From IMG/VR virus record IMGVR_UViG_3300046787_000286, positions 62,001 through 126,000 of that record: 64,000 nt of DNA. The stretch is one strand, 5' to 3'. Positions 223-47,154 of this stretch are shown one piece after another (the first letter of the stretch is position 1; each line of letters starts with the position of its first letter). The notes beneath the pieces were generated by a model that searched no databases, was not told the origin of the DNA, and was given only the letters and a program-made list of their open reading frames with translations. The translations under genes and the position numbers were made by a program.

Positions 223-296
223 TGCACACTTACAGGACTCGAACCTGACGACCAGGGCAATAGCCCTAGCTATGAATCCAACCATATCAGCGTGGC
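223..296 (-). pseudogene. tRNA-like element with contracted anticodon loop, no CCA
   Basis: T-arm CAGG-TTCGAGT-CCTG, D-arm-like GCTGATATGGTTGGATTCATAGC, hairpin TAGGGC-TATT-GCCCTG. Confidence 0.5.
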
Positions 297-347
297 CTAC
301 GCCTTTATGTGCATGTGTTTAAAGACTTTGTTACTGTCTAAGTATCT

Positions 348-7692: not shown

Positions 7693-7792
7693 CAAGCTCA
7701 TTGTAGGCAGGGCTCGAACCTGCACACAGTCCTTACGGATAATGTCGCCCCTATAACGGGGCAATGTCTACCAATTCCATCACTACGAGCTC
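7690..7792 (-). pseudogene. Leu-type class II tRNA-like RNA with non-canonical anticodon loop and a CTA end
   Basis: D-arm GTGATGGAATTGGTAGACA, T-arm GCAGG-TTCGAGC-CCTGC, GCCCC-GTTATA-GGGGC hairpin, bulged acceptor stem. Confidence 0.6.
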
Positions 7793-8715: not shown

Positions 8716-8816
8716 TGGTAGGAGCGGTGGGAATTGAACCCACGTTAACTGCCTTATCTAGACAGTGCTTACGGCTGTATAAGGGCCGCCCTTAGGCCAA
8801 CATTAGCAACACTCCC
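8716..8816 (-). tRNA. atypical 101-nt class II tRNA with TAT anticodon
   Basis: 7-bp acceptor stem, T-arm GTGGG-TTCAATT-CCCAC, loop CTTATAC, about 28-nt variable arm, A73, CCA. Confidence 0.7.
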
Positions 8817-9374: not shown

Positions 9375-9447
9375 TAGGCCCCGGAGGGAGGAATCGAACC
9401 TCCATTGGTTGTATACGGACCGTGTTACCATTACACTACAACCGGGA
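9375..9447 (-). pseudogene. degenerate tRNA-like element
   Basis: intact D-arm GTGTAATGGTAACAC and T-arm GGAGG-TTCGATT-CCTCC; weak anticodon arm; ends in CCTA. Confidence 0.6.
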
Positions 9448-12478: not shown

Positions 12479-12552
12479 TGGCACGGGAACTAGGGATCGA
12501 ACCTAGGACGACAGAGTCAAAGTCTGTTGTGTTACCTCTACACCATTCCCGA
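12479..12552 (-). tRNA. trnQ: tRNA-Gln(TTG)
   Basis: loop CTTTGAC, CCA. Confidence 0.95.
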
Positions 12553-12908
12553 ACAAATTTTTAACGCACTGTTGCCAATGCGTGTATTAAAAAGCACAGA
12601 TGTCTATGCTCTTTAATACGCTGGGTTTTTTCACACACCACAAAAGGTGCTTCTCATCCCCCAGGCCGCCCTCATTCTAGATTTTTATAGTGACTCTACG
12701 GCTCGCGTTGCCTAACCACTGTTGCTTAACCCAAGACCGGAGTCTTGCGTCTAGCCTTAAACTGTGCTGTTGCACGTTCTAGCTTCTGAGTAATGAGCGT
12801 TTGTCTTTGCTCAGAAGTTAAAGTATGCGTCCTCAACCAATCCTTCTTATCGTTGGGTATGGATTTTACTATGTCTGTCATTAATTGTCAATTCCTACTT
12901 TAGTTTTA

Positions 12909-12947
12909 CAAAACAAAAAACCCTAGGAGTTTTAGTCCTAGGGTCCT
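12909..12947 (-). terminator. intrinsic terminator (candidate attenuator)
   Basis: ACCCTAGGA-CTAAAAC-TCCTAGGGT followed by TTTTTGTTTT. Confidence 0.75.
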
Positions 12948-12969
12948 TTAGTTTGTAAGTTACTTGCTG

Positions 12970-13119
12970 TTAAGCGTAACCTGCTCCCTCGGACCCTAAG
13001 ATAATCTCTGGTGTGCGATCATTACTATTCATTCCTGATGCAAACCATACGGCGGGGCATGTGCCCAAGCCTTTAGCCTGTGTCTGGAGTGATAACGAAT
13101 AATAATGTATGTTGTTCAT
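12970..13119 (-). CDS. 49-aa leaderless leader-peptide candidate
   Basis: MNNIHYYSLSLQTQAKGLGTCPAVWFASGMNSNDRTPEIILGSEGAGYA; ATG is 6 nt after a TATAAT box. Confidence 0.55.
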   Translation of the reverse strand: MNNIHYYSLSLQTQAKGLGTCPAVWFASGMNSNDRTPEIILGSEGAGYA

Positions 13120-13125
13120 GTTAGT

Positions 13126-13154
13126 ATTATATGTGTTTATTTATACCTTGTCAA
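13126..13154 (-). promoter_or_regulatory. overlapping sigma70 and late promoter
   Basis: TTGACA-17-TATAAT with TATAAATA inside the spacer. Confidence 0.8.
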
Positions 13155-13204
13155 CCTAGTGTTGAGCTTTTATTTAGCCTTTTGGCAAAATTAGTTTGAT
13201 TATG

Positions 13205-13387
13205 TTATGATTTTCGTCTAGAACAGTTGGGATCATTGCAAACACTAATTCTCTTGCGATCACAGTGTGGACAATCTTTTGCGATCATCCATGTTTTTAA
13301 AAACATGGGTTTTTCATTCTTACCCGGTTTATCATTGCCTGAACATTGCGTGTAAATCATAATAGCCTCCTTGGCTACTATATACAA
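13205..13387 (-). CDS. small Cys-rich (Zn-finger-like) protein
   Basis: CPHC...CNDPNC. Confidence 0.45.
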   Translation of the reverse strand: MYIVAKEAIMIYTQCSGNDKPGKNEKPMFLKTWMIAKDCPHCDRKRISVCNDPNCSRRKS

Positions 13388-13421
13388 CGCCTTGCAAGTT
13401 ACTTACGTTGACACAAAAGGT

Positions 13422-13449
13422 AAAAAAGAATGCCCGCCGAAACGGGCAT
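13422..13449 (-). terminator. intrinsic terminator after the tmRNA coding piece
   Basis: ATGCCCG-TTTCGG-CGGGCAT-TCTTTTTT. Confidence 0.85.
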
Positions 13450-13835
13450 GGTTGTTTAGGTTACAAGGTAAGTCCTACCCCGGGTGCATGGGTTATTAAG
13501 CCAATACAGCAGCACGACGAGCGATTTTTACACCGCGAGCGTTGATAGCTACTTCACCTTTTGTATTTGCGTTTGCATTTACGTTTTTTTGCGTCTACGG
13601 CCGAGTTCCCCCAACCCTACGGCTTCTGCTTTGCCGAGCTGTCCACTTGTTTACTTGTTGCCCTGTCGAAACCATGGCAGGCCCATTATAAAACACACTA
13701 TTCCGTTATCCCACGTCTAGAACGATAACTGGGGCTCCGTAGAGCTAATGTGTTTTATGGTGGACCTGGCGGGAGTCGAACCCGCGTCCAGAACACTTTT
13801 CTCTTTGCTTCTTTCCTTACGGTTTTTACAGCAAT
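13450..13835 (-). ncRNA. ssrA: circularly permuted (two-piece) tmRNA
   Basis: acceptor piece ending GCGGGTTCGACTCCCGCCAGGTCCACCA (13758-13835) precedes the coding piece starting GGGCCTGCCATGGTTTCGAC (13684); G3-U70; tag ORF ANANTKGEVAINARGVKIARRAAVLA (13496-13576); promoter TTGACT-17-TATAAT at 13842-13870. Confidence 0.9.
13683..13760 (-). ncRNA. tmRNA intervening segment, equivalent to stem-clamped spacer I
   Basis: CCATAAAACACATTA/TAGTGTGTTTTATAATGG stem. Confidence 0.7.
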
Positions 13836-13872
13836 ACAACAATTATATATGACTTCTTTTAAAAAGTCAATA

Positions 13873-13895
13873 GAAAAGCCCACCGAAGTGGGCTT
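13873..13895 (-). terminator. intrinsic terminator
   Basis: AAGCCCAC-TTCG-GTGGGCTT-TTC. Confidence 0.8.
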
Positions 13896-13915
13896 AATAG
13901 TTAATCTAGTTTAGA

Positions 13916-14464
13916 TTAGAAGCCGAAACTTAGACCTAAACCAAATGCTTTCTCTTTGATATCCTGAGCAGAACGGCTTGCATTTAAGTTAACTGCAACA
14001 TTCTTTGCGACTGGCAAAGAGTATGTTGCAAATGAAACTGTTTGCTTAGTACGTGCGCCGTCTTCAGTTGAACCTACACGAGTCTTTGCACCCAACAACA
14101 AGAAGCCTGGACCGACTGGGCGACCATAAGTTGCACCAACTAAGCCATAGTTGAAACTTGCGCCACCGTTGAAGCCATTGTCATGACCAGCACCGATGAA
14201 TGGAGTAATACCTGCGATGTTAACCTTGTTGTTAGCAACAGTAGTTTCCAAACTGTTCACAACAACGCCGTCATTAAAACGTGCGGTTCGAGATTGCAAG
14301 TTGACTTGGTAGTCACCGAAGCCTTTTCCAGCACGAATATATTGGGCTGTGCTGTCAGTTGCACCTTTGCGACCTTGTACGTTTTCAACGTCAACTGATA
14401 CAAAGTCTACTGCAAAAGCAGAGCTAGAAATGGCCAAAGCCAAGATTGCGAAGATTTTTTTCAT
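13916..14464 (-). CDS. outer-membrane beta-barrel protein
   Basis: MKK signal peptide with AFA cleavage site, alternating beta-strands, C-terminal GLSFGF (BamA signal); sigma70 promoter at 14504-14532. Confidence 0.75.
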   Translation of the reverse strand: MKKIFAILALAISSSAFAVDFVSVDVENVQGRKGATDSTAQYIRAGKGFGDYQVNLQSRTARFNDGVVVNSLETTVANNKVNIAGITPFIGAGHDNGFNGGASFNYGLVGATYGRPVGPGFLLLGAKTRVGSTEDGARTKQTVSFATYSLPVAKNVAVNLNASRSAQDIKEKAFGLGLSFGF

Positions 14465-14546
14465 GTAATTTCCTTTTAGTTAAAATGACTTGCGTCACTT
14501 TACATTATATATTCGTAGCTACGTTAAGTCAAGTAAAAACGACAAA

Positions 14547-15101
14547 TTACTTGTTGGTGTCTTCTACAGGAACCCATCCTAATTTAAAAAAGTCTTCTCG
14601 GATCTCATCTGTGACACAGCTTTCACTAACATACTTGACAATGTCCATGCCTTGCTCTAGAGCCGATGCTATCTGCTGTTCAGTAAGCTCGCCTTTAATT
14701 CCTGAGCAGTACCAATCAATGTAGTCCCCAGACTCTACCATGTCAGCAACAATACCCCCGGCATAACGCCAGGAGCAAGAGTAAGTTTGCCCTTTCAGCA
14801 GCGGCCACACATCATTCTTTTGCCAGTCTTGATTGCACAAGGCAGCATAGATATTTTGTGCATAGCTTTCACGAGACTTAGCTTTGTCGCAGATCCACTC
14901 AGTGCTACGAAGATCATATTCCAAATTGTTCTGTTGCCACTCGGGCTCGGCTTCTTTTTTCTTAACCATATCACTCCACACACGCTCCCGCTCAATGGTT
15001 TGTCGAACTTCTTCATCAGTGTTGGGATCGCGCCCTTCTGCTATTACATCGTCGATGCGACACTTGCTGTGAAAGGTACCTTTAATGGGACTTGAGTTCA
15101 T
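14547..15101 (-). CDS. hypothetical phage protein
   Basis: long ORF downstream of a tRNA and promoter. Confidence 0.7.
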   Translation of the reverse strand: MNSSPIKGTFHSKCRIDDVIAEGRDPNTDEEVRQTIERERVWSDMVKKKEAEPEWQQNNLEYDLRSTEWICDKAKSRESYAQNIYAALCNQDWQKNDVWPLLKGQTYSCSWRYAGGIVADMVESGDYIDWYCSGIKGELTEQQIASALEQGMDIVKYVSESCVTDEIREDFFKLGWVPVEDTNK

Positions 15102-15119
15102 ATAGCTAAGAAAGTTAAA

Positions 15120-15194
15120 TGGTGCGACTGGAGGATTACGATACCTCGACCCAGCGATTATGAGTCGCTTGCTCTTCCTCTGAGCTACAGTCGC
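15120..15194 (-). tRNA. trnI: tRNA-Ile2(CAT), lysidine type
   Basis: AGCGA-CTCATAA-TCGCT arm typical of Ile2; CCA; promoter at 15203-15231. Confidence 0.8.
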
Positions 15195-15227
15195 TTATGT
15201 GTATTATACAACTATCCTAGATAATTG

Positions 15228-15611
15228 TCAATTGTAATTATCTAAAAACTTTTCCAAATCGCCGTATAAGTTAACTAACACAGCTTCACGGCTGCTAAAG
15301 AAAATTAGTTTAGCGACTCTTTGTTTTTCTACTTTGATGTAGTATGGCATTTGCAGCCTACGATCTAACTCTAAAATAGTTTTTTGGTTAAATCTAGACT
15401 TTGCCGGAATGTCAAATTCGTAGAACTCTATCTCTAACTCTTTAACAAATGCATCGTACCCATGTTTGGTTAAACGCATGCCACCGTTTTCTCTAAAGTT
15501 GTACCACCAAGTTATCCTTGCTTGGTCCACAGTCCAACTACCTGGTGGCAGTTTCTCCACCAGTTGTCGGGTGAGCTCTACCTTATCGCGCACCTGGGTA
15601 GATTTGTTCAC
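15228..15611 (-). CDS. hypothetical protein
   Basis: ORF in co-directional operon. Confidence 0.7.
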   Translation of the reverse strand: MNKSTQVRDKVELTRQLVEKLPPGSWTVDQARITWWYNFRENGGMRLTKHGYDAFVKELEIEFYEFDIPAKSRFNQKTILELDRRLQMPYYIKVEKQRVAKLIFFSSREAVLVNLYGDLEKFLDNYN

Positions 15612-21512: not shown

Positions 21513-22211
21513 ATGCAACCATTAAATTTACCAAAACTTATTGACAGTCCAGGCTTCATGTTAGCAGCCGATACTGTGTACTTTCAAAAATGGACAAAGT
21601 ATTTGTTCTTCAGTATTAAGAAACATGCACCTTGGGCGCACGTACATTTTCATGTGTTTGATCCAACTGCGGAAGATTTAGCCTGGTTGTCGGCAGCAGA
21701 TTGTAGTTATACATTTGAAACAACCCCATTAGATTATTGCCAGTCACACCAGGACAAGGTTGTGTATTGGTGCGCTGCAAGATATATTCGAACTACTGAA
21801 ATATACACTGATTCAACTCCTGTGATTAACCTAGATGCCGATAGCATTATGGTTTCTAGTTTAAGTCAAGAGCAATTTTTAAAAGACCTTGAACATAGCT
21901 GGGTACCAGTTGCTCCAAAGAGAGAAACTAGAAGTTTGTGTAGTGCGTTAGGTCTAGGGACTGATAACGGACGCTACGATGTTAGAAATGTATTACTAGA
22001 GGTATATAACAACTCTAGATTAACCTGGGCATTAGACCAACGACTATGCGATCAACTGCTAGACTCAGGCAAACTACAAGCAATGGACTTACGATACACA
22101 GATTTCAAAATGAAAGATACCTCTTACATCTGGACTGGTAAAGGAGACAGAGTTGATAAGTCTAGTTTCCAAAATGCACTGCGCCCGTATATAGGGTTAG
22201 TATCTCGCTAA
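21513..22211 (+). CDS. glycosyltransferase-like protein (GT-A, DAD motif)
   Basis: INLDADSI, DQ near the C-terminus, WTGKG; TTAAATA late motif upstream. Confidence 0.5.
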   Translation: MQPLNLPKLIDSPGFMLAADTVYFQKWTKYLFFSIKKHAPWAHVHFHVFDPTAEDLAWLSAADCSYTFETTPLDYCQSHQDKVVYWCAARYIRTTEIYTDSTPVINLDADSIMVSSLSQEQFLKDLEHSWVPVAPKRETRSLCSALGLGTDNGRYDVRNVLLEVYNNSRLTWALDQRLCDQLLDSGKLQAMDLRYTDFKMKDTSYIWTGKGDRVDKSSFQNALRPYIGLVSR

Positions 22212-22994
22212 TGATTCTTTAAGTCCTAGCAACGGAAGTTTATATTTTTCTAATTTGTCACCGTTGCCTGTGTAACTCATTCCTTGCTCAGTAACTTCGA
22301 TAAGAGATTTGTCTAGATTGTGTGTGTCGCAGTAGATACCTAATGTCTCGCTAAGGGTATACTTTTCAGCATACACACAGTTAATGTCTCGATCGATTAT
22401 GTTTCCATTGAGTACTGCATTAATGACCGTAGTAAAATCTTCGGCGCTGATCATATCAAATTTTCTATCAGTGATACTGAACTTATTGCCTTGCGCTAGA
22501 GAGGAATGTAATTTTTTAAGTAATCTAGCATTGTCTTCAGACGAGTCGAAACACCCAAACAATCGCAAATTATAACACATAGAATGTGTCCACAAGCATC
22601 TAGATATAAGATTTTTACTCATCCCGTAACTTTGTTGCGGTGAACAAGTGAATATGCTAGATTCTCTAGCACAATCAATTGGCTGACTAATATCAAACTC
22701 TGCACCTGTGCCGATATTAATTAATGTATCAAACTCACGACTATTAGACATGAGATTCATCACAGACAGAAGATTACTATTAACTATGTTACGATCTTCG
22801 GCCCATGGTGTGTTGCGACCAGCTGCACCACAATGGATTACTGCATCATATCTATTATGTTGAAAATGATTGTGTGTTGCTTCTGCGTCAGACAAGTCAA
22901 GTTCCTGTCGCGTAAGTGCAACGACATTGTATTGTAAATGTCTAGCAAGGTACGAGCCGAGGAATCCCCCGGCCCCTGTAATCAAAACCTTCAA
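22197..22994 (-). CDS. NAD-dependent sugar epimerase/reductase (extended SDR; YerF-like position)
   Basis: TGAGGFLG, YGMSK. Confidence 0.85.
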   Translation of the reverse strand: MKVLITGAGGFLGSYLARHLQYNVVALTRQELDLSDAEATHNHFQHNRYDAVIHCGAAGRNTPWAEDRNIVNSNLLSVMNLMSNSREFDTLINIGTGAEFDISQPIDCARESSIFTCSPQQSYGMSKNLISRCLWTHSMCYNLRLFGCFDSSEDNARLLKKLHSSLAQGNKFSITDRKFDMISAEDFTTVINAVLNGNIIDRDINCVYAEKYTLSETLGIYCDTHNLDKSLIEVTEQGMSYTGNGDKLEKYKLPLLGLKESLARY

Positions 22995-24751
22995 CGAATT
23001 CTTTCGTAGTTAAAGTAAGGATTGCCAGCTGCAAATTCTTCGTCGCTAACTAGTGGTGATTGATCGTTGATTGGGCGACCTTTCTCTAGCTTGGGCTCAA
23101 TTTGCACACCTGGGTGAATCTTGATTTCGATGATCCTACGTCCAGGTGCAAGCAATTCTGCGTTAATTTGATCTAGTGATGTAACTAGTTTGTAATCAAA
23201 GTCGAATGCTTCAGCAATTTTCTTAAAGTTAGGACGCCCCGGACCATTTTCTGTAGCAGCGTGTCGCCCATCCATGTAAGCATCTTGGAATTGACAAATC
23301 ATGCCTAGGCGATTGTTGTTAAACACAATGACTTTAATGTCTAGATCATATTCTTTGACTGTTTGCAATTCTTGCAAGTTCATCTGAATGCCGCCGTCAC
23401 CGTTAGAACAAATGTGTTGACGGTCTGGCGCTACTAATGCTGCACCAATTGATGCTGGCAACGCATATCCCATTGCATAATGCCCGGAACTTGTCATTAA
23501 CAACTGATCTTGGTCGCGATGGAAAGACTGGTAAACCCAACAGTGGTTGGCACCTGCATCCGTAGTAATAACAGCATTGGGTTCTGCTACTTTTTGTAAT
23601 TTTTCAACAACAAGATACGGACTCATTGTATCGTATTGCTTGCTATTTGAACTTGTATCTTTGTTAAAATACTTTGCTTTAAGTCCTTGACAATACTTTG
23701 GCCAGTCAGCATCAAACTTAGGCTTCTCTACTCCACGCAAGGCTTTCGAAAGATTGCGCAAATCAAAATGTAATCCTTTATAGTTTGCAGGATCTAGCTT
23801 TTCTAACTCGGCAGGATCGAGATCAACACACAATATTTCTGCATTGGGTGCAAAGTTTGCAGGGTTACCTGAACGCTGACGGTTGTCTAAACGTGATCCT
23901 AGCACAAGGATCTTGTCTGCGTTTTGAATTGCATTATTGCCTCCACGATTACCATATACACCAAAGTGACCAATGTAGTTAGGTGCTTCGTGATTAAAGT
24001 AGTTGAGTGCTGCCCAGGTAGCAACAAACGGAATTTTATTTGATTGCAACCAGCGTTCGAGTTCTACTTGTTGACCAGCAAGTCCAACACCTGCACCAAA
24101 GATAATCAATGGGCGATGTGCGCCTCCCAGGAATTGTTGGATTACTTTTCCTACTTGTTCAGGGGAGATACCTGTATCAACTGCTAACCACTTATCAGAG
24201 TCTGGCAATAACATAGTGCTATCTTCCATTTCTGCATTTTGCAAGTTCATTGGAATGTCAACTAGCACTGGGCCCATGCGACCTGAATATGCTTCTTCTA
24301 CTGCACGTTTTAATTCACGACGCATATCGTCATGTGTGGTTACGTTAACAGCATATTTGCAAACAGGTTTAACCATGCTAACAATATCCATTTGTTGGAA
24401 ACCTGCTTGACGCACAGCAGCACCACGATAGAGCTTTTGTTCTTCGTAGTTGACTTGTCCAGTAATATGCAAGCTAGGAATAGAATCATAATAACCACAC
24501 GCAATACCTGTGATTAAGTTAGATGCTCCTGGCCCTGATGTTGCCATTGACACACCTAGTTGCCCATTGGTACGCCATAATGCATCAGCTGCCATTGCTG
24601 CGGCTTGTTCGTGCTGGAAGCAAATAACATCCATGCCCTCCTCTAGTGCAATTTGATCAATTAAGAATGTGATTGCACCACCTTGCACTTGGAACACTTT
24701 GTTTGCACCAATTGCTTTTAAAAACTTAGCTACGTATTGACTACCTTTCAT
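22991..24751 (-). CDS. ThDP-dependent acetolactate-synthase-like enzyme (YerE-like)
   Basis: HEQAAAMAADA, TSGPGASN, GDGGIQMNLQEL...NN ThDP motif; sits among NDP-sugar genes. Confidence 0.88.
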   Translation of the reverse strand: MKGSQYVAKFLKAIGANKVFQVQGGAITFLIDQIALEEGMDVICFQHEQAAAMAADALWRTNGQLGVSMATSGPGASNLITGIACGYYDSIPSLHITGQVNYEEQKLYRGAAVRQAGFQQMDIVSMVKPVCKYAVNVTTHDDMRRELKRAVEEAYSGRMGPVLVDIPMNLQNAEMEDSTMLLPDSDKWLAVDTGISPEQVGKVIQQFLGGAHRPLIIFGAGVGLAGQQVELERWLQSNKIPFVATWAALNYFNHEAPNYIGHFGVYGNRGGNNAIQNADKILVLGSRLDNRQRSGNPANFAPNAEILCVDLDPAELEKLDPANYKGLHFDLRNLSKALRGVEKPKFDADWPKYCQGLKAKYFNKDTSSNSKQYDTMSPYLVVEKLQKVAEPNAVITTDAGANHCWVYQSFHRDQDQLLMTSSGHYAMGYALPASIGAALVAPDRQHICSNGDGGIQMNLQELQTVKEYDLDIKVIVFNNNRLGMICQFQDAYMDGRHAATENGPGRPNFKKIAEAFDFDYKLVTSLDQINAELLAPGRRIIEIKIHPGVQIEPKLEKGRPINDQSPLVSDEEFAAGNPYFNYERIR

Positions 24752-24760
24752 GGTATCTCC

Positions 24761-26080
24761 TTATTTGTATAAACTTAAGAAACCGCGAACAATTTTACCA
24801 ATGTAGGCAATTTGTTCGGGTGTGATTACAGGGCTAGTACCATGGAAGTAAGTATGGGTCATAGCATGTGTTGCGTTAGGGAAATTGTCCTTGGCCAGCT
24901 GCGGGTCCATTAAATGGCTATAAGCAGGCTGCAACATAATATTGCCAGCAAAGTAAGGACGAGTCTGGATCAAGTTCTCTTCTAGGTAATCCACAATGTC
25001 ACTGCGAGTAAACGGTGCATCTTTTCTAATAGTTAACGGGAACGCAAACCAGCTGGGATCACTCTTGGCAGTTGCTCTTGGCAAGTGGAAGAACTCTTCA
25101 TAGTCCTTGTAAATGTCAAACAGCAGTTGATAGTTACGTCGACGCAATGCGTGAATTTCTGGTAACTTTTTCAACTGTTCAAGACCCATAGCACACTGAA
25201 CTTCAATTGGTTTCATGTTGTAACCAATTTCGTCGTATACGTATTTGTGATCAAAAATTTCATCAGGTAAAGTAGGAATCCAGTTATTAAAACGATTGCC
25301 ACAAGTACCACACTTCAATTTGTTTGCTTCTGGCCCAACACAATAGCAGCCACGCCCCCATTCACGGAAGCTACGCAAGATAACATCTGTATTGGCATCG
25401 TTAGTTGCAACGTATCCACCTTCGCCCATGGTCATGTGATGTGCTGGATAGAAACTGCACGATGCCATTAAACCGTAACTGCCCAATGGCTTGCCATCAT
25501 ATGTGCTACCTAACGCATCACAGCAATCTTCTAGAAGAATCAAATTGTGTTGTTTCACTAATTCCATTAATCGATCCATTACTGGAGGATTACCTAGCAC
25601 GTGAGCAAACGTAATAACACGAATATCAGGGTTAGCTAATAAGGTTGACTCAACTTGATCTAAATCTAAGTTAAGTGTATCAAGTTCAATGTCTACAAAC
25701 ACTGGCTCAAAACCAACTTGCAATGTTGGGTTTAACGTTGTTGGAAATCCAGCAATAGGCATTAGAACTTTAGTGCCCTTGGGTAGGTTGTAGCCACGCT
25801 TGGATGTCAACGCTGACATCATTAATAAGTTACTAGATGATCCTGAGTTTGTTAAGATACCTTTGTCTTTACCAAAATACTTCGGAAACTCACGTTCAAA
25901 CTTTAGGCCATCGTCGCCCATAACAAGCCAACCCTTGAGCAAACTTGCGACCCCTGCTACAAATTCTTTTTCGTCAAAATATGACCCGGCATAGTTGACA
26001 AAATCTTTGCCAGCTACCCATGTTTTATTTTCTTGCTTTTGTTTAATGTGCTCTTGCACTAATTTAAGAATTTCTTCCAT
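24761..26080 (-). CDS. rfbH: CDP-4-keto-6-deoxyglucose 3-dehydratase (E1, RfbH/DdhC)
   Basis: NSGSSSNLL, SFYPAHHMTMGEGG (His in place of Lys), RDC-like GRGCYC...C, DHKYVYDEIGYN. Confidence 0.88.
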   Translation of the reverse strand: MEEILKLVQEHIKQKQENKTWVAGKDFVNYAGSYFDEKEFVAGVASLLKGWLVMGDDGLKFEREFPKYFGKDKGILTNSGSSSNLLMMSALTSKRGYNLPKGTKVLMPIAGFPTTLNPTLQVGFEPVFVDIELDTLNLDLDQVESTLLANPDIRVITFAHVLGNPPVMDRLMELVKQHNLILLEDCCDALGSTYDGKPLGSYGLMASCSFYPAHHMTMGEGGYVATNDANTDVILRSFREWGRGCYCVGPEANKLKCGTCGNRFNNWIPTLPDEIFDHKYVYDEIGYNMKPIEVQCAMGLEQLKKLPEIHALRRRNYQLLFDIYKDYEEFFHLPRATAKSDPSWFAFPLTIRKDAPFTRSDIVDYLEENLIQTRPYFAGNIMLQPAYSHLMDPQLAKDNFPNATHAMTHTYFHGTSPVITPEQIAYIGKIVRGFLSLYK

Positions 26081-26802
26081 TAGATAATACCTACTTCTTT
26101 ACTGATAAATTGCATTAAATTGATAACTTGTTGACTGCCACGGCTAGCATGGAAGTGTAAGATACGAGCGTCTTTAAGATTGATCCCATTCCAGTTATTG
26201 TGTTCAATAACTTCTTCAGGAGACAATGTTCTGAGTTTCATTGCCTGGTACGCCAGCCACGGATGTAAACGATCAGTGTCCGGTATGTCTTGTTTCCAGA
26301 ACATAGTGTTGTGTCGTAGTTGATCAAACCCCCAGTGTTGATCAGGATGACCTTCTCGTTGTTCCCACAACTGATCCCCTAGATCCCAAATATCCTGGCT
26401 CATAGTATGAGGGTAGTACTGAATGTCATCATTAAAGTAATTTGTAAATTCTTTATATGATTTGGGGTCCGTGTAATTGAATAAGCGATATTCCTTGAAC
26501 TTACTATCAAACAATTTAGTAGGTTGGGTCATCAGTGTATCGGCACCAGCCCAGAAAATATTACACGGCTCTTTGTGCCAAAGTTCCTTGATTGCATTCC
26601 AGTTTGCTACTGTATACTCATCGTTGTTTTTTACAGGTTCTGTCCAAAGCACTGCTTCAAACGGCTCCTCAACAAACTTCTGAAAGCTAGCCACACTTAG
26701 GTCATACATTTGCCTGTAGAACGTATAAAGATCAGTTCGTTTTTGATGTAGCCATCCGTCCTCAATTGGACGGACAGCGCAAACTAGATAATTTTTTACC
26801 AT
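26080..26802 (-). CDS. glycosyltransferase-like hypothetical protein
   Basis: in the sugar operon; FWAGADT and ILHFHASR motifs resemble GT-A enzymes. Confidence 0.5.
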   Translation of the reverse strand: MVKNYLVCAVRPIEDGWLHQKRTDLYTFYRQMYDLSVASFQKFVEEPFEAVLWTEPVKNNDEYTVANWNAIKELWHKEPCNIFWAGADTLMTQPTKLFDSKFKEYRLFNYTDPKSYKEFTNYFNDDIQYYPHTMSQDIWDLGDQLWEQREGHPDQHWGFDQLRHNTMFWKQDIPDTDRLHPWLAYQAMKLRTLSPEEVIEHNNWNGINLKDARILHFHASRGSQQVINLMQFISKEVGII

Positions 26803-27776
26803 ACAAAGTTCTCAATGTAATATTGTACTATCTCTTCTAGGGCTGTGTCAAAGACTGATTGCGGGTACCATCCCAGCCCCTTGAGTTTCGAGTCATCGAT
26901 TGCGTACCTTACATCTTGCCCCATACGCTGACTATCAAAAATATAATCTTCCCAATTATCCGAAGCATCTTCACCTTTGTAGATTTTTAGAAGCTTCTTG
27001 ATAACTTCTCGGTTGGGCATTTCGGCATTTCCTGAAATATTGTATATCTCATTAGTAACACCTGATTTGATAATAGTTACAACAGCAGTAGCAGTATCAG
27101 CAGCATGCAACCAAGTACGCACAGGTTTTCCTTGATCGTGAAGATCAATTTTCTTACCTAGCGTTAGGTATTTGATTGACTTAGGGATAAGTTTTTCAAC
27201 ATACTGTCCTGTGCCATAGTTATTGGTTGGTCGGACAATAACATACTTTAAGCCATATGTTCTAGCCCACGCAGTAATAAGCATGTCGGCAGCAGCTTTA
27301 CTTGCTGAGTATGGATTACTAGGCTTTAACAAATCTGTTTCTGAATGAGTACCTGCTTCAATGTCGCCGTAAACTTCGTCTGTTGAGAAATGTAAAAATA
27401 CAGGTTGCTTGTGTCGCGGCTGTTCTTTGATTAGTTCTAGTAGATGATGCACACCATTTACATTACTGTGCAAAAATACTCCACTGCTCATAATACTATT
27501 ATCAACGTGAGTTTCTGCAGCCATGTTAATAACATAGTCGCAATCGTGTAACCGATCTAGTTCATTGATATCAGTCTTGATAAACTTAAATGTTTTGTAT
27601 TTTTTAAATTTTTCTAAGAAGTGTTCATTACTAGCATAGGTACATTTATCTACACCTATAACATACCAACCCCGAGCTAGTAATTCGTGAGTCACATGCG
27701 ACCCCATAAACCCAAGGCATCCAGTTACATAAACTATCTTCTTCAAATCTTTCTCGCTTTGACTAATAAATGCCAT
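26796..27776 (-). CDS. rfbB: NDP-glucose 4,6-dehydratase (RmlB-like)
   Basis: TGCLGFMG, AAETHVDNSI, STDEVYG, PYSASKAA, NNYG. Confidence 0.9.
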   Translation of the reverse strand: MAFISQSEKDLKKIVYVTGCLGFMGSHVTHELLARGWYVIGVDKCTYASNEHFLEKFKKYKTFKFIKTDINELDRLHDCDYVINMAAETHVDNSIMSSGVFLHSNVNGVHHLLELIKEQPRHKQPVFLHFSTDEVYGDIEAGTHSETDLLKPSNPYSASKAAADMLITAWARTYGLKYVIVRPTNNYGTGQYVEKLIPKSIKYLTLGKKIDLHDQGKPVRTWLHAADTATAVVTIIKSGVTNEIYNISGNAEMPNREVIKKLLKIYKGEDASDNWEDYIFDSQRMGQDVRYAIDDSKLKGLGWYPQSVFDTALEEIVQYYIENFVW

Positions 27777-28522
27777 CCGAGATATTCTCGAACAGCTTCA
27801 CGCATTGCATCTGGCATAGCAGCAAACCATGGCTCTAATTCATAGCGGCCTGCCTTATACGCATCTACATTATACATAAAGCAATGATCCTGACGTACAC
27901 GTTCTATATGCCAGCCTGGACCCAACAACTCAGGAATTTCTTCTTTGGTGAAACTTTTAGCATACGGGCAACCAGCTTGTGCTTCGTATTGGTCAAGCCC
28001 TTTATAAATCATTGCTTGCTTCCAGGAATTCTTCGCGTATACCATGAAGCGGAACTCTCCACCAGGATTAAGCAACGAGTGTACATTGTTGATTATAGTA
28101 TTGATTGCTGGAAAGTGATGAATAACACCATAGCTGTAAACAAGATCAAATTTTCCCAGGTTTGCAGTGTCGGTGCTATTACTTGCATCAATGTTATGGA
28201 ATTCTCCATCGAGCCCTAGTACTTCAAAACGTTGTCGAGCAATTTCCACACTTTGGTCACTGTAGTCAATGCCTACATATTCTGCACCGTGCTTGGCAAA
28301 TTCTTCGCCGTCGCTAGCAATACCACATCCAACTTCTAAAACACGTTTGCCTTGCCACAAATGAAATCCAGCAAATTCTGGAATGTGCGGCTCCACTTGA
28401 TATCGACGTTCGCTAACTTGATGGAAAAACTTTGGTGTTCCAAACTCAGCTGTGCCGTGTTTGATATTACAAGGCTGTGCATTCCAATATTTTTTAATTC
28501 GTGCCTCTAACTCGTCACTCAT
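27743..28522 (-). CDS. class I SAM-dependent methyltransferase
   Basis: VLEVGCGIASDG, FDLVYSYGVIHH, LNPGG. Confidence 0.85.
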   Translation of the reverse strand: MSDELEARIKKYWNAQPCNIKHGTAEFGTPKFFHQVSERRYQVEPHIPEFAGFHLWQGKRVLEVGCGIASDGEEFAKHGAEYVGIDYSDQSVEIARQRFEVLGLDGEFHNIDASNSTDTANLGKFDLVYSYGVIHHFPAINTIINNVHSLLNPGGEFRFMVYAKNSWKQAMIYKGLDQYEAQAGCPYAKSFTKEEIPELLGPGWHIERVRQDHCFMYNVDAYKAGRYELEPWFAAMPDAMREAVREYLGWHLLVKARKI

Positions 28523-29349
28523 GCTGCACCCATCTTTGTCATTGGTATTTGGAATTGTTTGCATTGATTATTGGTATCATTTTCTTGTAGTTTAATCCAC
28601 GGGTCTTGTTTACCAGACTTGACGTTTGCCCACCAGGTGATATCCAAGTTCTTAGATGCCATGTAATCAGATAGCTTTTCAACGTCTTGCATTCTACGCA
28701 AGTGCCAACTCACGTGATGAAAATCTCTCGAGTCTGATGGATTGCCTTCGTACATAACACGATTTTTGTAAGTGTCATCATTGTTATTGCCAGTGAGATC
28801 ATGACGATCGTGTGTGACCCAAACAGGAACCCTTTCGAAAATATCCAACAAGTAAGCCTGTTGACTTAGCCAAGCATCAGAAATCTGATGTGGACTTAGA
28901 TATCCCAAATGGTCTAACCATTCTCGAGGGACGATAGGGAAAATTGAATATGGATGATCGTTGTGTGTATGAACAGCCAAACATTTAAACTCCCCTGTGT
29001 GTTTAGCAATAACCTTGTCCCACCCAGCGGTGTCCATCATTGCATCGTCGTTCCAGAACATTAACCAATCAGCGTCAGACGACACTGCAAGAGCGTTAAC
29101 ATATTCGTTTAATCTATTGTATCCAAGTCTTTCAAAAACTTGTGCATCATAGTTGACTTTTTTCTCAATTAACCACGGCTCCAATTCGTTTTGGAAATGT
29201 TCGATGCCAGGTGTATCATCGTGATCGAACCCTAGTAATAGTTGAACTGTGTTTAAATCAACTGCTCGGTTAATTAAACTCATTACGCTGCGGCTTAGCG
29301 CATCTGTGCGTCCTCGTGTGGGTAGTAAAATTGCAATGCTATATTTCAT
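28519..29349 (-). CDS. GT2-family glycosyltransferase
   Basis: LLPTRGR, FDHDD, WNDD motifs. Confidence 0.75.
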   Translation of the reverse strand: MKYSIAILLPTRGRTDALSRSVMSLINRAVDLNTVQLLLGFDHDDTPGIEHFQNELEPWLIEKKVNYDAQVFERLGYNRLNEYVNALAVSSDADWLMFWNDDAMMDTAGWDKVIAKHTGEFKCLAVHTHNDHPYSIFPIVPREWLDHLGYLSPHQISDAWLSQQAYLLDIFERVPVWVTHDRHDLTGNNNDDTYKNRVMYEGNPSDSRDFHHVSWHLRRMQDVEKLSDYMASKNLDITWWANVKSGKQDPWIKLQENDTNNQCKQFQIPMTKMGAA

Positions 29350-29386
29350 ATCATTATGTATCTATAAAATGAAGTACCGGCAATTT

Positions 29387-29884
29387 TTACGCAAATAGAT
29401 CTTCGTTCCATTCACGGTGGCCTTCTCGATACGCCATGTTGCTTTGTGTTTCGCGCACTTCAACACGATAGCACCATAAACGATCTGCTTCGCCAGGTCC
29501 CCACATCTCAGGAATGTAAACACCATTTACATACTTGTACAGCATGTCGCTTAGTGCTTCACAACCTAGTGCAGGTAGCACAACGATCTTGGCCATGTTC
29601 TTCTCTTGTAGCAGTTTAAATGTTTCCAACTCTGGATCATCTTGTGCAACAATAAGCGTATGGTCGAATTGGTCTTCCAGTGTCTTCTTTAGTTCCTTGA
29701 GACCGCCGTAGTCTGCGGCCCAGTTACGAACGTCTAGATCATTGGTTCCAAAATAGAACTTCATTGAAAAAGCGTAGCCGTGGATTAAGTTACAGTGACT
29801 ATCAGCACGCCATTGTCTGTAAGCAACAGGGAAGGCGTTGTGATACTCTTTTGTAGAGGTGTATTTGTATTGGATGGGTGTCAT
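29387..29884 (-). CDS. queD: 6-carboxy-5,6,7,8-tetrahydropterin synthase
   Basis: HCNLIHGY (CxxxHG), FDHT, VEVRET. Confidence 0.88.
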   Translation of the reverse strand: MTPIQYKYTSTKEYHNAFPVAYRQWRADSHCNLIHGYAFSMKFYFGTNDLDVRNWAADYGGLKELKKTLEDQFDHTLIVAQDDPELETFKLLQEKNMAKIVVLPALGCEALSDMLYKYVNGVYIPEMWGPGEADRLWCYRVEVRETQSNMAYREGHREWNEDLFA

Positions 29885-29894
29885 GCTTGTTTCT

Positions 29895-29957
29895 CCTATG
29901 TTAATTTTAGCATAGGCAGCAGAATTTGTATAGCGGGATGATGCTCTAAAGGCCGCT
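29895..29957 (-). promoter_or_regulatory. preQ1-I-like riboswitch candidate upstream of queD
   Basis: AGCGG-CCTTTAGAGCATCATC-CCGCT-ATACAAATTCTG, followed by a CCTATG/CATAGG hairpin over the RBS. Confidence 0.55.
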
Positions 29958-30081
29958 TAGAGAAATACTTATGCTAGTTCCACTAGATGGTATTTAGAAG
30001 CCGGATAATGTTCCTGTAGCCACTCCAATAACCCTTCTTGGTTTGGCAACTGAATTTCTCCAGTTTTGTTTGTTATCACAA

Positions 30082-30483
30082 TCATTTTGGTAACTGATAG
30101 CCGCCACTTTTGTAGTTTGCTTGCCCGTGAATAACACCACGCACACCGCCGATTGGGTTAGCACAGTCACCGGTTTTGCGAGGAATCAGATGCACATGCG
30201 GATACATTACTGTTTGGCCAGCAGCTTCGCCCATGTTGATTCCAACGTTGAATGCATCACACATGCCTTCATCAACTAGTTTCTGGCCATGATAAAATGC
30301 ACGTTTAAAACAGTGTTCGATTGTGGCGCCATTGTTTGTTACAGGCACAAACAACAAGTGTCCCTTAGCAACAGGAAATCTATCTTGAAATACTGCGACT
30401 TGTAGATCACTAAGTTCGTGAACTTTTAAATCCCAAGGCGCTACACCTGCTTGTGCGGCCTTGTCTAATGTATTGTATTTCAT
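30082..30483 (-). CDS. HIT-family hydrolase
   Basis: PVAKGHLL, AAGQTVMYPHVHLIPR (HxH triad region). Confidence 0.9.
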   Translation of the reverse strand: MKYNTLDKAAQAGVAPWDLKVHELSDLQVAVFQDRFPVAKGHLLFVPVTNNGATIEHCFKRAFYHGQKLVDEGMCDAFNVGINMGEAAGQTVMYPHVHLIPRKTGDCANPIGGVRGVIHGQANYKSGGYQLPK

Positions 30484-30486
30484 AGT

Positions 30487-31704: not shown

Positions 31705-32288
31705 GCATGTATTATAACAGTTTGGGATTTATTGGTCAAACTATTCCAAAAGTATCAATGTTACACTATCAGATGTCTAAGCGACATCTTCTCTTTCGTC
31801 TTTGACTCAGAGAGTTTTGTAGCAAACGAAGTTGAGATATTTTCGCTAGATGCTTGATCCATACGACACCCTGATAAAGGGCGCAGTAAAAAGAATGTTG
31901 AGACATTCGCTGAGTGTTTCACTCACACTGACAATAGGTATTTGTGTTGTTCACGCTTCTGGGCTCTGTACCTTACCCCACCTACTACGATTTTTAAGAG
32001 AACCTCGGTGCCAATGTTCTCATGAGCGTATTAAACAATAAGTTGGATTACTCCACACTCAACCTGTTCCGACTACGCAAACGTAAAACCCACAGGGGCA
32101 ACATTTTAAGGCATCTCTAGTCAAGGCTAGAGGTAGTGCATAGAAGTCCTACTACAGCGGTAGGATTTGGTTGCCGTCACACATCAGAACGGATTCGCCA
32201 GCGGTATTACAATCGGCCCGCCACCCTTGGAGCTGTATTAAATGTCAAGTGAAAGCACGGGCGAACCGTGCTTACGCAAGTAGATTAA

Positions 32289-32990: not shown

Positions 32991-32991
32991 A

Positions 32992-35723: not shown

Positions 35724-35746
35724 ATAAGTTCTCTCATGTAAAAGTT

Positions 35747-36658: not shown

Positions 36659-37059
36659 TTGCCGCCGTTGAATGACATTGCAGTTTTTTGCGAAAGCTCA
36701 CGCACGAGATCTCGATCAATAGATTGTGCCATGTTTTGAGCAGCAGTCATGGTGTATTTGTCGTTCCAATCATATGCCTGGCGCGGTTCATATAGTTTGT
36801 TAGTAACATTACGAAGCTCTTCATCCATGCGACTCATACGTTGATTTAGATGATGCATGTCCTCAAACATTCTACGCAACGGTCCATGATTGCGATCGTG
36901 CCGTCCTGATGATTCAGGAGCAGTTAACGCAACAATCATCATTAACTTGCGTAGTGTTTCCACCACGCGAGGATCGCTACTGGTCATTGCAGTATCGAAC
37001 ATGTCGATAAAGCGTTCCAGGTCAAAGTCGGCCTGGTCCGACTCTCTTGCAGCACTCAT
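36637..37059 (-). CDS. hypothetical protein
   Basis: start MSAARES directly after the upstream stop. Confidence 0.65.
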   Translation of the reverse strand: MSAARESDQADFDLERFIDMFDTAMTSSDPRVVETLRKLMMIVALTAPESSGRHDRNHGPLRRMFEDMHHLNQRMSRMDEELRNVTNKLYEPRQAYDWNDKYTMTAAQNMAQSIDRDLVRELSQKTAMSFNGGKWPRGTL

Positions 37060-46551: not shown

Positions 46552-47154
46552 TCATGATGCATCTCGTTTACTAATCACAGTGTCGATCAAACCGTATGCT
46601 AGTGCTTGTTCAGCTGACATGAATGTATCACGATCCATATCCTTCTCAAACTCTGCATAAGTCTTGCCTGCACTGTTATGGCTAACATAGATTTCAGTCA
46701 GTCGCTTTTTCAAGTAGGTGATTTCTTTGTAAGAAATTTCAATGTCACTTTGCATACCACGTGCGCCACCGGAGGGTTGGTGAATCATGTGTCGTGCATT
46801 TGGTAACATTTTACGTTTGCCCGGTGCACCTGCTTGTGCCAGCAGTGAGCCCATTGAGCAGGCCTGTCCCATTACAATAGTTTGCACATCGGGACGAATA
46901 AACTGCATGGTATCATAAATTGCCATGCCAGCAGTTACTGAACCACCTGGGCTATTGATATACATGTAGATATCGCTTTTTGGATCTTCGCTTTCGAGAT
47001 ACAACATCTGGGCAACAATCAAGTTTGCCATCTGATCATGCACTTCGCCTTCTAGCAAAATAACACGATCACGAAGCAAGCGTGAATAGATATCGTAGCT
47101 ACGTTCGCCTTTGCTGGTTTGTTCCAGCACCATTGGGACTAATGCCATATTCAA
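46552..47154 (-). CDS. clpP: ClpP protease subunit
   Basis: [26 protein letters not shown]. Confidence 0.97.

What the first reader, a model, noticed from the sequence alone, without database searches (positions are those of the whole stretch)
13450..13835. Phage-encoded circularly permuted two-piece tmRNA with a long basic tag
Seen: the acceptor/T-arm piece (ending GGTCCACCA) lies upstream of the GGGCCTG...GGTTTCGAC coding piece, with its own promoter and terminator. The reading frame after TAAAT gives ANANTKGEVAINARGVKIARRAAVLA (26 aa). Established: permuted tmRNAs occur in alphaproteobacteria, some betaproteobacteria and cyanobacteria; typical tags are about 10 aa and end in LAA, which ClpX reads. 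Inference: the long Arg/Lys-rich tag ending in VLA may redirect or weaken degradation of rescued proteins.
Basis: partly seen in the sequence, partly recalled or inferred. Interest (0 to 1): 0.8.

Follow-up and report, generated by a model that had tools for sequence, protein, structure and literature searches.

The report
Phage two-piece tmRNA, long tag
A giant freshwater phage carries its own split (circularly permuted) ribosome-rescue RNA with an unusually long, basic tag; the gene is real and belongs to a large mosaic family found here only in viral contigs, but phage two-piece tmRNAs are already known and the function of the odd tag is untested.

Summary
On the minus strand, 13870-13422, lies a complete circularly permuted tmRNA gene (ARAGORN; Rfam tmRNA_permuted 91.1 bits against a cut-off of 47). 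The window is part of a 214-kb freshwater jumbo-phage contig.

The RNA resembles the betaproteobacterial type but scores below that model's cut-off. The exact 24-base start of its coding piece occurs in more than 120 viral contigs and in none of 185,579 bacterial species genomes.

In this family long tags (22-34 aa) outnumber 10-aa tags. They are conserved as peptides, and the genes are mosaics: this same tag cassette sits on other tRNA-like domains. The helices that join the two pieces show compensatory changes. The tag-coding part occurs in two metatranscriptomes.

The window also encodes a cellular-type ClpP.

Not shown: cleavage into two pieces, charging with alanine, tagging, and the fate of tagged proteins.

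Phage two-piece tmRNAs were reported in 2022, so this is a new variant of a known kind. Interest is moderate.

The parts
13842..13870 (-). Sigma-70-type promoter: TTGACT (13870-13865), 17-nt spacer, TATAAT (13847-13842). The expected start is about 13837-13835, only 3-5 nt before the first helix strand.
   Evidence: 11 of 12 consensus positions. About 20 of 35 relatives have a promoter-like pair at the same distance from the helix.
13758..13837 (-). Acceptor piece (3' part of the tRNA-like domain). It contains the P2-distal 5' strand GCUGU (13832-13828), the P2-proximal 5' strand UGUUCUG (13795-13789), the T-arm (13785-13769), the acceptor 3' strand CAGGUCC (13768-13762), and discriminator A plus encoded CCA (13761-13758).
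   Evidence: The 5' end is inferred from the promoter position, not mapped.
13685..13757 (-). Intervening segment of 73 nt, presumed to be removed from the precursor. It folds into an extension of the acceptor stem and contains no ORF.
   Evidence: Fold of 13800-13661: -50.3 kcal/mol, z = -3.1. Identical over 73 of 73 nt in L069; L089 matches the window as L069 does. Depth is 0 over 13704-13739 in all four runs laid; this is weak evidence, because relatives differ in this segment.
13599..13684 (-). 5' part of the coding piece. It contains the acceptor 5' strand GGGCCUG (13684-13678, with G3 pairing to U), the D-loop analogue (13677-13665), the P2 3' strands (13665-13659 and 13642-13638), and two covarying hairpins in the PK1 position (13636-13620 and 13616-13599).
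   Evidence: The pseudoknot pairing itself was not established.
13493..13576 (-). Tag reading frame: resume codon GCA at 13576-13574, 26 codons to 13499, then UAA UAA at 13498-13493. The preceding context is GUAAAU.
   Evidence: The same peptide occurs in L383. L386 differs by one synonymous and one replacement change. L140 differs by an in-frame 3-nt indel.
13422..13492 (-). 3' trailer. A weak helix closes over the stop codons. A conserved hairpin lies at 13482-13464, and the terminator hairpin at 13449-13430 is followed by a T run.
   Evidence: The Rfam beta_tmRNA alignment places its terminal hairpin on 13449-13430.
46552..47154 (-). Cellular-type ClpP protease subunit (200 aa). It is a candidate partner for tagged proteins; no link to the tmRNA has been shown.
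   Evidence: Pfam PF00574 at 268.6 bits, full length. NCBIfam PRK00277 at 312 bits against a cut-off of 249, while the head-maturation protease model scores 101.7 against a cut-off of 120. The alignment to solved ClpP retains the conserved Ser, His and Asp motifs; I placed the catalytic residues from knowledge of E. coli ClpP.

Best explanation
This is a working, phage-encoded ribosome-rescue RNA of the circularly permuted kind.

Proposed pathway:
1. Host RNA polymerase transcribes a precursor of about 410 nt from the near-consensus promoter to the terminator (inferred).
2. The tRNA-processing enzymes remove the 73-nt intervening segment. This leaves an acceptor piece of about 78 nt ending in CCA and a coding piece of about 225-260 nt. 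The two pieces are held together by the acceptor stem and the two P2 helices. Gene order and covariation are shown; cleavage is inferred by homology with bacterial two-piece tmRNA.
3. The G3:U70 pair and discriminator A allow charging by the host alanyl-tRNA synthetase. With host SmpB and EF-Tu the RNA enters ribosomes stalled on broken messages. Such messages should be abundant in an infected cell whose mRNA is being degraded or cut by defence nucleases. This step is inferred.
4. Translation resumes at GCA 13576 and adds the 26-residue tag.

Fate of the tag: I commit to the view that it is still a proteolysis signal, read through its small non-polar C-terminus by ClpP-based or C-terminus-specific proteases, possibly including the phage's own ClpP core. 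The long basic N-terminal part would change which adaptor or unfoldase reads it. That last step is the least certain.

The gene is one mosaic member of a large tmRNA family that was found here only in viral contigs. In this family, tag cassettes are exchanged between different tRNA-like domains.
For: - Identity: ARAGORN and Rfam RF04321 at 91.1 bits against 47. The beta_tmRNA model aligns end to end.
- Alanine identity elements and CCA are read directly from the sequence. G3:U70 is invariant in 34 of 34 relatives.
- Structure: 96.7% canonical pairs against 38-48% for slid partners. Compensatory changes occur in both helices that join the pieces, in the T and acceptor stems, and in the PK1-position hairpins.
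- Expression signals. The promoter sits at a fixed distance in relatives.
- RNA: a 128-nt metatranscriptome contig with no differences lies on 13461-13588. A 153-nt contig from another study lies on 13486-13639. The flanks have zero depth in the three metatranscriptome runs (X23, X24, X25).
- Tag translated: in the largest long-tag class pN/pS is 0.29, and the variable columns by codon position are 8, 10 and 23 of 31. Serine codons switch between TCT, AGT and TCA in the basic class. All indels are in frame.
- Tag kept as a unit: L383 shares the PK1 region, tag and trailer at 99-100% identity on a different tRNA-like domain. L082 and L070 share the tRNA-like domain at 100% but carry a 10-aa tag.
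- Viral-contig-only family: the 24-mer occurs in more than 120 viral contigs and in 0 of 185,579 species genomes.
- ClpP.
Against: - No processed ends, charging or tagged peptide has been observed. The RNA data are assembled contigs from mixed communities, and the matching contigs cover a module shared with at least one other phage (L383).
- The beta_tmRNA score (62.4) is below that family's cut-off of 84, and part of P2 differs from the model.
- PK1 was seen only as hairpins, not as a proven pseudoknot.
- No SmpB gene was found among 59 window ORFs or near the fetched phage tmRNA loci, so function depends on an unknown host's SmpB.
- The VLA ending departs from the LAA that ClpX reads in E. 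coli, so a role in degradation is an inference.
- For the window's own tag family only four sequences exist, which is too few for a selection test of its own.
Confidence: 0.7

Rival explanations
1. Rescue without the usual destruction. The phage tmRNA frees ribosomes, but its tag has been altered so that host adaptors and ClpX no longer read it. Rescued products are then spared, or routed to another fate such as a phage-specific adaptor, aggregation or membrane association.
For: The basic class lacks the N-D-E motif found in all 10-aa tags of bacterial relatives. It ends in VLA, FAV or LAV rather than LAA. Net charge is +2 to +5, against -2 to 0 for the short tags. The long N-terminal part is conserved as a peptide.
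Against: Every ending in the family stays small and non-polar. If escape from proteolysis were the aim, charged endings would serve better, and none is seen. The phage adds a ClpP rather than lacking one. The last codons are also constrained by the helix around the stop codons.
Confidence: 0.2
2. A decoy. The RNA mainly titrates host SmpB or competes with host tmRNA in order to blunt host trans-translation, as was proposed for the tRNA-like-domain-only molecule of mycobacteriophage DS6A.
For: PMC4131195 reports that a domain-only molecule inhibits tmRNA. The strong promoter would give high copy number.
Against: The whole coding piece, the resume context, the frame and the stop codons are conserved, and tags evolve under peptide-level constraint. 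A decoy needs none of these.
Confidence: 0.05
3. A passenger or remnant: a host ssrA copy picked up by chance, or an attachment-site fragment, now drifting, with the long frame arising by accident.
For: Fragments of ssrA are common at prophage ends. My SmpB scan of viral contigs returned mostly prophage borders.
Against: Both pieces are complete. The exact 24-mer is in more than 120 viral contigs and in no bacterial genome scanned. Only 41 nt of the T-arm resemble bacterial relatives. Covariation, the conserved promoter and the conserved tag cassette all argue for selection.
Confidence: 0.03
4. The tag is shorter than predicted, because translation resumes at an internal codon.
For: ARAGORN mis-places the resume codon in several relatives, namely L001, L083 and L109. 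Many long acidic tags end in what looks like a complete 10-11-aa canonical tag.
Against: In the window the GUAAAU-GCA context matches the family and the Rfam consensus at 13581-13574 only. There is no canonical tag inside this frame. Third-position variation begins at the first codons in the large class.
Confidence: 0.05

Closest known systems
Betaproteobacterial two-piece tmRNA (Rfam RF01850; here Azonexus/Dechloromonas, Thauera, Accumulibacter and Propionivibrio of the Rhodocyclaceae)
   Same: Same gene order (acceptor piece, intervening segment, coding piece). Same D-loop and P2-proximal sequence. Same resume context UAAAUGC-AAC. Terminal hairpin at the 3' end. Of the three lineage models, this is the only one that still aligns.
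   Different: Scores 62.4 bits against a cut-off of 84. Only about 41 nt of the T-arm are alike at 90%. The P2-distal region is rebuilt. The intervening segment is 73 nt against about 18 in the model, and the gene is 446 nt against a median of 328. The tag is 26 aa and basic, whereas 83 of 86 bacterial calls have 10-aa ANDE[RQ]FA[LIV]AA tags.
Phage-encoded two-piece tmRNA of OM43 phage Melnitz and pelagimyophages (PMC9004378)
   Same: A permuted ssrA carried by a lytic, T4-like aquatic phage and placed behind an early-type promoter. That paper counted 53 two-piece forms among 133 distinct phage tmRNAs.
   Different: Those are reported as alphaproteobacterial in type, and one carries a glutamine riboswitch. 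No long or basic tags, tag cassettes or phage-specific clade are described there. No Rfam riboswitch match was found in the window.
One-piece tmRNAs of mycobacteriophage Bxz1 relatives and Bacillus phage G; the domain-only RNA of phage DS6A (PMC4131195)
   Same: A phage-borne ribosome-rescue RNA in large phages that also carry many tRNAs.
   Different: Those have the standard, unpermuted gene order, or no tag frame at all.
Unannotated permuted tmRNA of Xanthomonas phage X1 (OQ427096, 200 kb)
   Same: A cultured large phage with a permuted tmRNA (Rfam RF04321 at 76.6 bits) and an acceptor arm 83% identical to the window's over 65 nt.
   Different: The rest of the gene is unrelated. ARAGORN predicts a 14-aa tag. 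The host genus is a gammaproteobacterium.

Membership tests
tmRNA, circularly permuted form (Rfam RF04321) | Score at or above the curated gathering score, full-length match | tested here: met
   91.1 bits against 47, model positions 1-213 of 213.
tmRNA, circularly permuted form (Rfam RF04321) | tRNA-like domain with a 7-bp acceptor stem, G3:U70, discriminator A, a CCA end and a T-arm | tested here: met
   Read from the sequence. G:U is invariant in 34 of 34 relatives, and the T and acceptor stems covary.
tmRNA, circularly permuted form (Rfam RF04321) | The 3' half of the tRNA-like domain is encoded upstream of the 5' half, and the two halves are joined by helices between the pieces | tested here: met
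   Gene order. Helices 13832-13828 with 13642-13638, and 13795-13789 with 13665-13659, show G-C to A-U and C-G to U-A exchanges.
tmRNA, circularly permuted form (Rfam RF04321) | Tag frame that opens with an alanine codon in the conserved upstream context and ends at a stop codon | tested here: met
   GUAAAU-GCA at 13581-13574 and UAA UAA at 13498-13493. Frame and peptide are conserved in L383, L386 and L140.
tmRNA, circularly permuted form (Rfam RF04321) | Pseudoknot PK1 upstream of the resume codon | tested here: inconclusive
   Two covarying hairpins occupy the position. No pseudoknot pairing was established.
tmRNA, circularly permuted form (Rfam RF04321) | The precursor is cleaved into two stable RNAs | tested here: inconclusive
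   RNA-library contigs cover both pieces, and nothing covers 13704-13739. However, only contigs were available, and relatives differ in that segment.
tmRNA, circularly permuted form (Rfam RF04321) | Charging with alanine, binding of SmpB, and tagging of stalled nascent chains | not testable with these tools
   These need biochemistry or genetics.
Betaproteobacterial tmRNA (Rfam RF01850) | Score at or above the curated gathering score | tested here: not met
   62.4 bits against 84. Several P2-distal pairs are non-canonical in that alignment. The gene is therefore beta-like, but is not filed as a member of RF01850.
Phage-encoded gene | Lies on a contig with phage hallmark genes and is not a bacterial flank | tested here: met
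   IMG/VR contig of 214 kb. T4-type DNA polymerase. Homologues in PA5oct-like and Sinorhizobium jumbo phages. 30 tRNAs. No bacterial genome holds the 24-mer.

The most novel reading that the evidence does not exclude
Freshwater jumbo phages maintain their own lineage of two-piece tmRNAs in which the tag is an exchangeable effector cassette. Long tags of 22-34 aa, in at least three peptide families including this basic one, would reprogramme the fate of every protein rescued during infection. One possible route is hand-over to the phage's own ClpP through an adaptor other than the host's. In some relatives the segment cut out of the precursor also doubles as the mRNA of a small protein.
Probability: 0.25. 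Interest if true: 0.75.

Novelty: new variant of a known kind. Interest (0 to 1): 0.55.

Why it matters
Trans-translation is usually treated as host housekeeping, and very little has been written on phage tmRNAs (four papers matched my phrase search).

This case would show three things if confirmed:
- A large group of uncultured giant phages keeps a private, recombining set of rescue RNAs.
- The tags differ sharply from those of the nearest bacterial relatives.
- The tags are conserved as peptides.

If the long tags change how rescued proteins are handled, they would be a natural library of degradation or targeting signals. They would also show that phages tune protein quality control, not only tRNA supply.

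The tags are short and easy to test as fusions in laboratory strains.

Tried and rejected
- GenBank phages: no close relative of the gene or of 20 kb around it. Only short T-arm matches were found.
- Host assignment through the tmRNA: the exact 24-mer is in no bacterial genome. A degenerate pattern retrieves mostly Rhodocyclaceae, whose genes share only the T-arm. The host therefore remains unknown. The outer-membrane barrel gene next door points to a Gram-negative host.
- SmpB: not among 59 window ORFs. Not in any fetched viral locus by tblastn with E. coli SmpB. A profile scan of viral contigs was swamped by enterobacterial prophage borders. The other 150 kb of the contig could not be read.
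- ClpX: no matching family appeared among the 25 of 50 matched families that the Pfam scan of window ORFs listed, so its absence is only inferred.
- Metagenome scan for the start of this tag: no match.
The joints across the intervening segment come from relatives with other segments, not from processing.
- A first all-family alignment mixed several RNA chassis types and was discarded in favour of the window-type subset.
- A selection test on the basic tag class alone is saturated (pN/pS 0.77), so I rely on close pairs and on the larger class.
- A pseudoknot between the 3' hairpin loop and downstream bases was examined by eye and could not be established.
- A protein-coding reading of the locus was rejected. 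Only short, unconserved ORFs overlap it.

Full report
**1. The observation**

The feature lies on the minus strand. ARAGORN reports a permuted tmRNA at 13405-13850 with the tag ANANTKGEVAINARGVKIARRAAVLA and two stop codons. Rfam's tmRNA_permuted model (RF04321) matches 13812-13528 over its whole length at 91.1 bits, against a gathering score of 47.

Reading the reverse strand gives this layout:
- Promoter TTGACT-17-TATAAT at 13870-13842.
- An acceptor piece with the T-arm (13785-13769) and the 3' acceptor strand, ending in discriminator A plus CCA at 13761-13758.
- A 73-nt intervening segment (13757-13685).
- A coding piece that begins GGGCCUG at 13684.
- Resume codon GCA at 13576-13574, behind GUAAAU.
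- 26 sense codons, then UAA UAA at 13498-13493.
- A hairpin at 13482-13464.
- A terminator hairpin at 13449-13430, followed by a T run.

The third acceptor pair is G:U, which is the alanine identity element. Only short, unconserved ORFs overlap the locus.

**2. Genomic context**

The window equals bases 62001-126000 of IMG/VR contig 3300046787_000286, which is 214 kb long. The sample is a freshwater metagenome.
- ARAGORN finds 30 tRNA genes, all on the minus strand, around the tmRNA.
- The window encodes a T4-type DNA polymerase.
- A 557-aa protein is 34% identical to one of Pseudomonas jumbo phage PA5oct and its relatives, and 28% identical to one of a Sinorhizobium jumbo phage.
- No GenBank phage is close at the DNA level.

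The element is an uncultured jumbo phage.

**3. Which kind of tmRNA**

With relaxed thresholds, beta_tmRNA (RF01850) is the only one of the three older lineage models that is listed. It aligns from 13856 to 13427, including the promoter-like leader and the terminal hairpin. It reaches only 62.4 bits against a cut-off of 84. The gene is beta-like but is not a member of the curated family.

At least 12 of the tmRNA-bearing viral contigs fetched here exceed 200 kb. The same 24 bases occur in none of the 185,579 species genomes scanned.

A degenerate version of the pattern retrieves bacterial permuted genes almost only from Rhodocyclaceae. In that bacterial set:
- 83 of 86 calls have 10-aa tags of the form ANDE[RQ]FA[LIV]AA.
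- The median gene length is 328 nt.
- Only about 41 nt of the T-arm resemble the window.

The window's gene thus belongs to a clade seen so far only in viral contigs.

*Caveat:* both sets were gathered with sequence patterns. They are not unbiased samples.

**4. Structure**

I aligned 34 distinct relatives of the window's chassis type, joining the acceptor piece to the coding piece up to the resume codon.
- The predicted pairs are canonical in 96.7% of cells, against 38-48% when the 3' partner is slid by one to three columns.
- Compensatory exchanges occur in both helices that would hold the two pieces together: GCUGU 13832-13828 with ACAGC 13642-13638, and UGUUCUG 13795-13789 with CAGGGCA 13665-13659.
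- They also occur in the T stem, in the acceptor stem, and in two hairpins at the PK1 position.
- The G:U pair never varies.

The intervening segment folds as an extension of the acceptor stem (z = -3.1). This is the shape expected of a substrate for the tRNA-processing enzymes.

In about 20 of 35 relatives a sigma-70-type promoter sits at the same short distance from the first helix. The primary 5' end is therefore probably the 5' end of the acceptor piece.

**5. RNA data**

Four runs labelled RNA (one of them probably DNA) were laid on 13380-13900.
- One freshwater metatranscriptome holds three contigs without a single difference from the window: 128 nt on 13461-13588 (tag and trailer), part of an 81-nt contig on 13658-13700, and part of a 63-nt contig on 13751-13792.
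- A riverine metatranscriptome from another study holds a 153-nt contig on 13486-13639, with one difference and one gap.
- Depth is zero on both flanks in the three metatranscriptome runs (X23, X24, X25), and zero over 13704-13739 in all four.

This shows that the coding module is present in RNA libraries. It does not prove processing, for three reasons: contigs carry no ends, the matching module is shared with at least one other phage (L383), and the intervening segment varies among relatives.

**6. The tags**

Among 121 permuted tmRNA calls in the viral loci there are 88 distinct tag-coding sequences. The lengths are bimodal: 31 of the sequences encode 10 aa, and 49 encode 22-34 aa.

The long tags fall into peptide families:
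- An acidic-aromatic family, for example ANADTFDFSAMSFTGNTVRGAANESRFALAA.
- A second acidic family that starts A-[NK]-x-x-T-F-[EK]-[YF].
- A basic family that includes the window. Its members share T-x-G-E-V, then G-[KR]-[GN]-[VI]-K-[FIL]. Net charge is +2 to +5, and the endings are VLA, FAV or LAV. One divergent member (L063) ends in LAA.

In the largest family pN/pS is 0.29, and the variable columns by codon position number 8, 10 and 23 of 31. The long frame is therefore read as protein from its first codons.

In the basic family, close relatives differ by serine codon switches (TCT, AGT, TCA) and other silent changes.

A search with the start of this tag found the window's own tag family:
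- L383 has the identical peptide.
- L386 differs by one silent change and one replacement change.
- L140 replaces RRA with GLGS through an in-frame indel, so the arginine pair is not essential.

**7. Mosaic genes**

Segment-by-segment comparison gives the following.

| Relative | Shares with the window | Differs from the window |
|---|---|---|
| L383 | PK1 region, tag and trailer, 99-100% identical | Different acceptor piece and 5' tRNA-like domain |
| L069, L089 | Acceptor piece, all 73 nt of the intervening segment, most of the 5' domain | Unrelated 10-aa tag |
| L082, L070 | Acceptor arm and 5' domain, 100% identical | Tag is AND[SE]QFLMVA |

L122, a phage with an 86% identical neighbouring gene, has ANDEQFALAA.

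Tag cassettes are thus exchanged between chassis, and this cassette has been kept intact through such exchanges. I take this as the best evidence that the tag itself is under selection.

**8. Mechanism**

- *Shown:* a complete, conserved, covarying, promoter-driven permuted tmRNA gene whose tag frame evolves as a peptide.
- *Inferred by homology:* cleavage into two pieces, alanylation, entry into stalled ribosomes with host SmpB, and addition of the tag.
- *Inferred from comparison:* the tag still serves proteolysis. Every ending in the family is small and non-polar, and the phage encodes a cellular-type ClpP.

That ClpP lies at 46552-47154.
- It matches the Pfam model over its full length.
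- It passes the NCBIfam ClpP subfamily cut-off and fails the head-maturation protease model.
- Its alignment to solved ClpP retains the conserved Ser, His and Asp motifs; I placed the catalytic residues from knowledge of E. coli ClpP.
- Close homologues occur in at least 600 viral stretches. Two of them lie on contigs related to this one, 3300043418_000114 (tmRNA with a 10-aa tag) and 3300046779_001123 (L386, this tag family).

From established work on E. coli, cited from memory and not tested here:
- ClpX reads the terminal LAA.
- SspB reads the N-D-E-N-Y part of the tag.
- A second class of ClpX signals has basic residues before a non-polar end, as in MuA.

The basic class has lost the N-D-E part, so a change of adaptor or unfoldase is plausible.

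The rival view, that the tag weakens degradation, cannot be excluded.

No SmpB was detected, and no ClpX family appeared among the families listed, for the window ORFs. No SmpB lies next to the phage tmRNAs.

**9. Comparison with what is known**

- Phage tmRNAs have been listed since 2014 (PMC4131195).
- Huge phages were noted to carry tmRNA and SmpB (PMC7162821).
- Buchholz et al. 2022 described the two-piece ssrA of phage Melnitz. They counted 53 two-piece forms among 133 distinct phage tmRNAs, mostly aquatic (PMC9004378).
- The 2025 tmRNA database holds 79 phage sequences and gives 10 aa as the commonest tag length (PMC11915505).
- I also found an unannotated permuted tmRNA in the cultured Xanthomonas phage X1.

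None of the texts I could search describes a beta-like clade confined to viral contigs, long tag families or tag-cassette exchange. Only four papers matched my phrase search for phage tmRNA.

**10. Verdict**

The identification is right, and the functional inference remains open. I class this as a new variant of a known kind, of moderate interest (0.55). The interest comes mostly from the family-level picture, not from the existence of the gene.

Noticed in passing
window 46552-47154 (-): A cellular-type ClpP proteolytic subunit that retains the conserved catalytic-site motifs; it is not the ClpP-like head-maturation protease. Homologues at 75-97% identity occur in at least 600 IMG/VR stretches.
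   Followed up: partly
L001, L003, L010, L012, L054, L060, L068, L124 and others (intervening segments of relatives): In 19 of 31 distinct phage tmRNA genes whose intervening segment is 100 nt or longer, that segment holds a small ORF of 38-83 codons. The ORF starts just after CCA, behind a conserved ribosome-binding site (CCA-UAAGGA...AUG). Peptide families recur, and one of them (cysteine-rich) reads into the tmRNA 5' end. The window's own 73-nt segment has no ORF.
   Followed up: partly
window 13916-14464 (-): A 182-aa protein with a signal peptide and a C-terminal ...SFGF. It resembles phage outer-membrane beta-barrel proteins. Homologues down to 25-30% identity lie next to a tmRNA in many relatives, on either side of it.
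   Followed up: partly
L010, L025, L048, L071, L077, L095, L110, L123, L125, L135, L139, L141: A tRNA with anticodon CUA (amber-suppressor type; ARAGORN labels it Pyl) lies within a few kb of the tmRNA in related jumbo-phage contigs. There is none in the window.
   Followed up: no
window 224-312, 7699-7789, 8719-8816, 9379-9445 (-): Odd members of the tRNA array. ARAGORN makes two calls with undetermined anticodons. Rfam reports two tRNA matches that ARAGORN does not, one of them 98 nt long.
   Followed up: no
L302 1153-1603 (Xanthomonas phage X1, OQ427096, about 120.98-121.43 kb): A permuted tmRNA (Rfam 76.6 bits) that is not annotated in the GenBank record. In phage BUDD the matching stretch lies under a 'hypothetical protein'.
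   Followed up: partly
window about 22000-37000 (-): The window ORFs match sugar-nucleotide and modification families: GDP-mannose dehydratase and epimerase family (3 ORFs), DegT-type aminotransferases (2), radical SAM (2), and a thiamine-pyrophosphate enzyme. Only three were placed: an aminotransferase at 24761-26080, a DegT fragment at 32992-33585 and GTP cyclohydrolase I at 32289-32990. NAD synthase, ferritin-like and NUDIX matches also occur at unlocated positions.
   Followed up: no
window 12500-15300 (-): Perfect or near-perfect sigma-70 consensus promoters: 12 of 12 at 15231-15203 and 13154-13126, and 11 of 12 at 14532-14504, 13870-13842 and 12891-12863. The scan found eleven promoter-like sites where shuffles give five.
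   Followed up: no
L301, L240, L298: Permuted tmRNA calls in unexpected bacterial records. One is a 1071-base contig binned as Flavobacteriaceae, carrying a 402-nt gene of the phage type (probably a mis-binned phage fragment). Others are copies in Cupriavidus numazuensis and Herbaspirillum sp. YR522.
   Followed up: no
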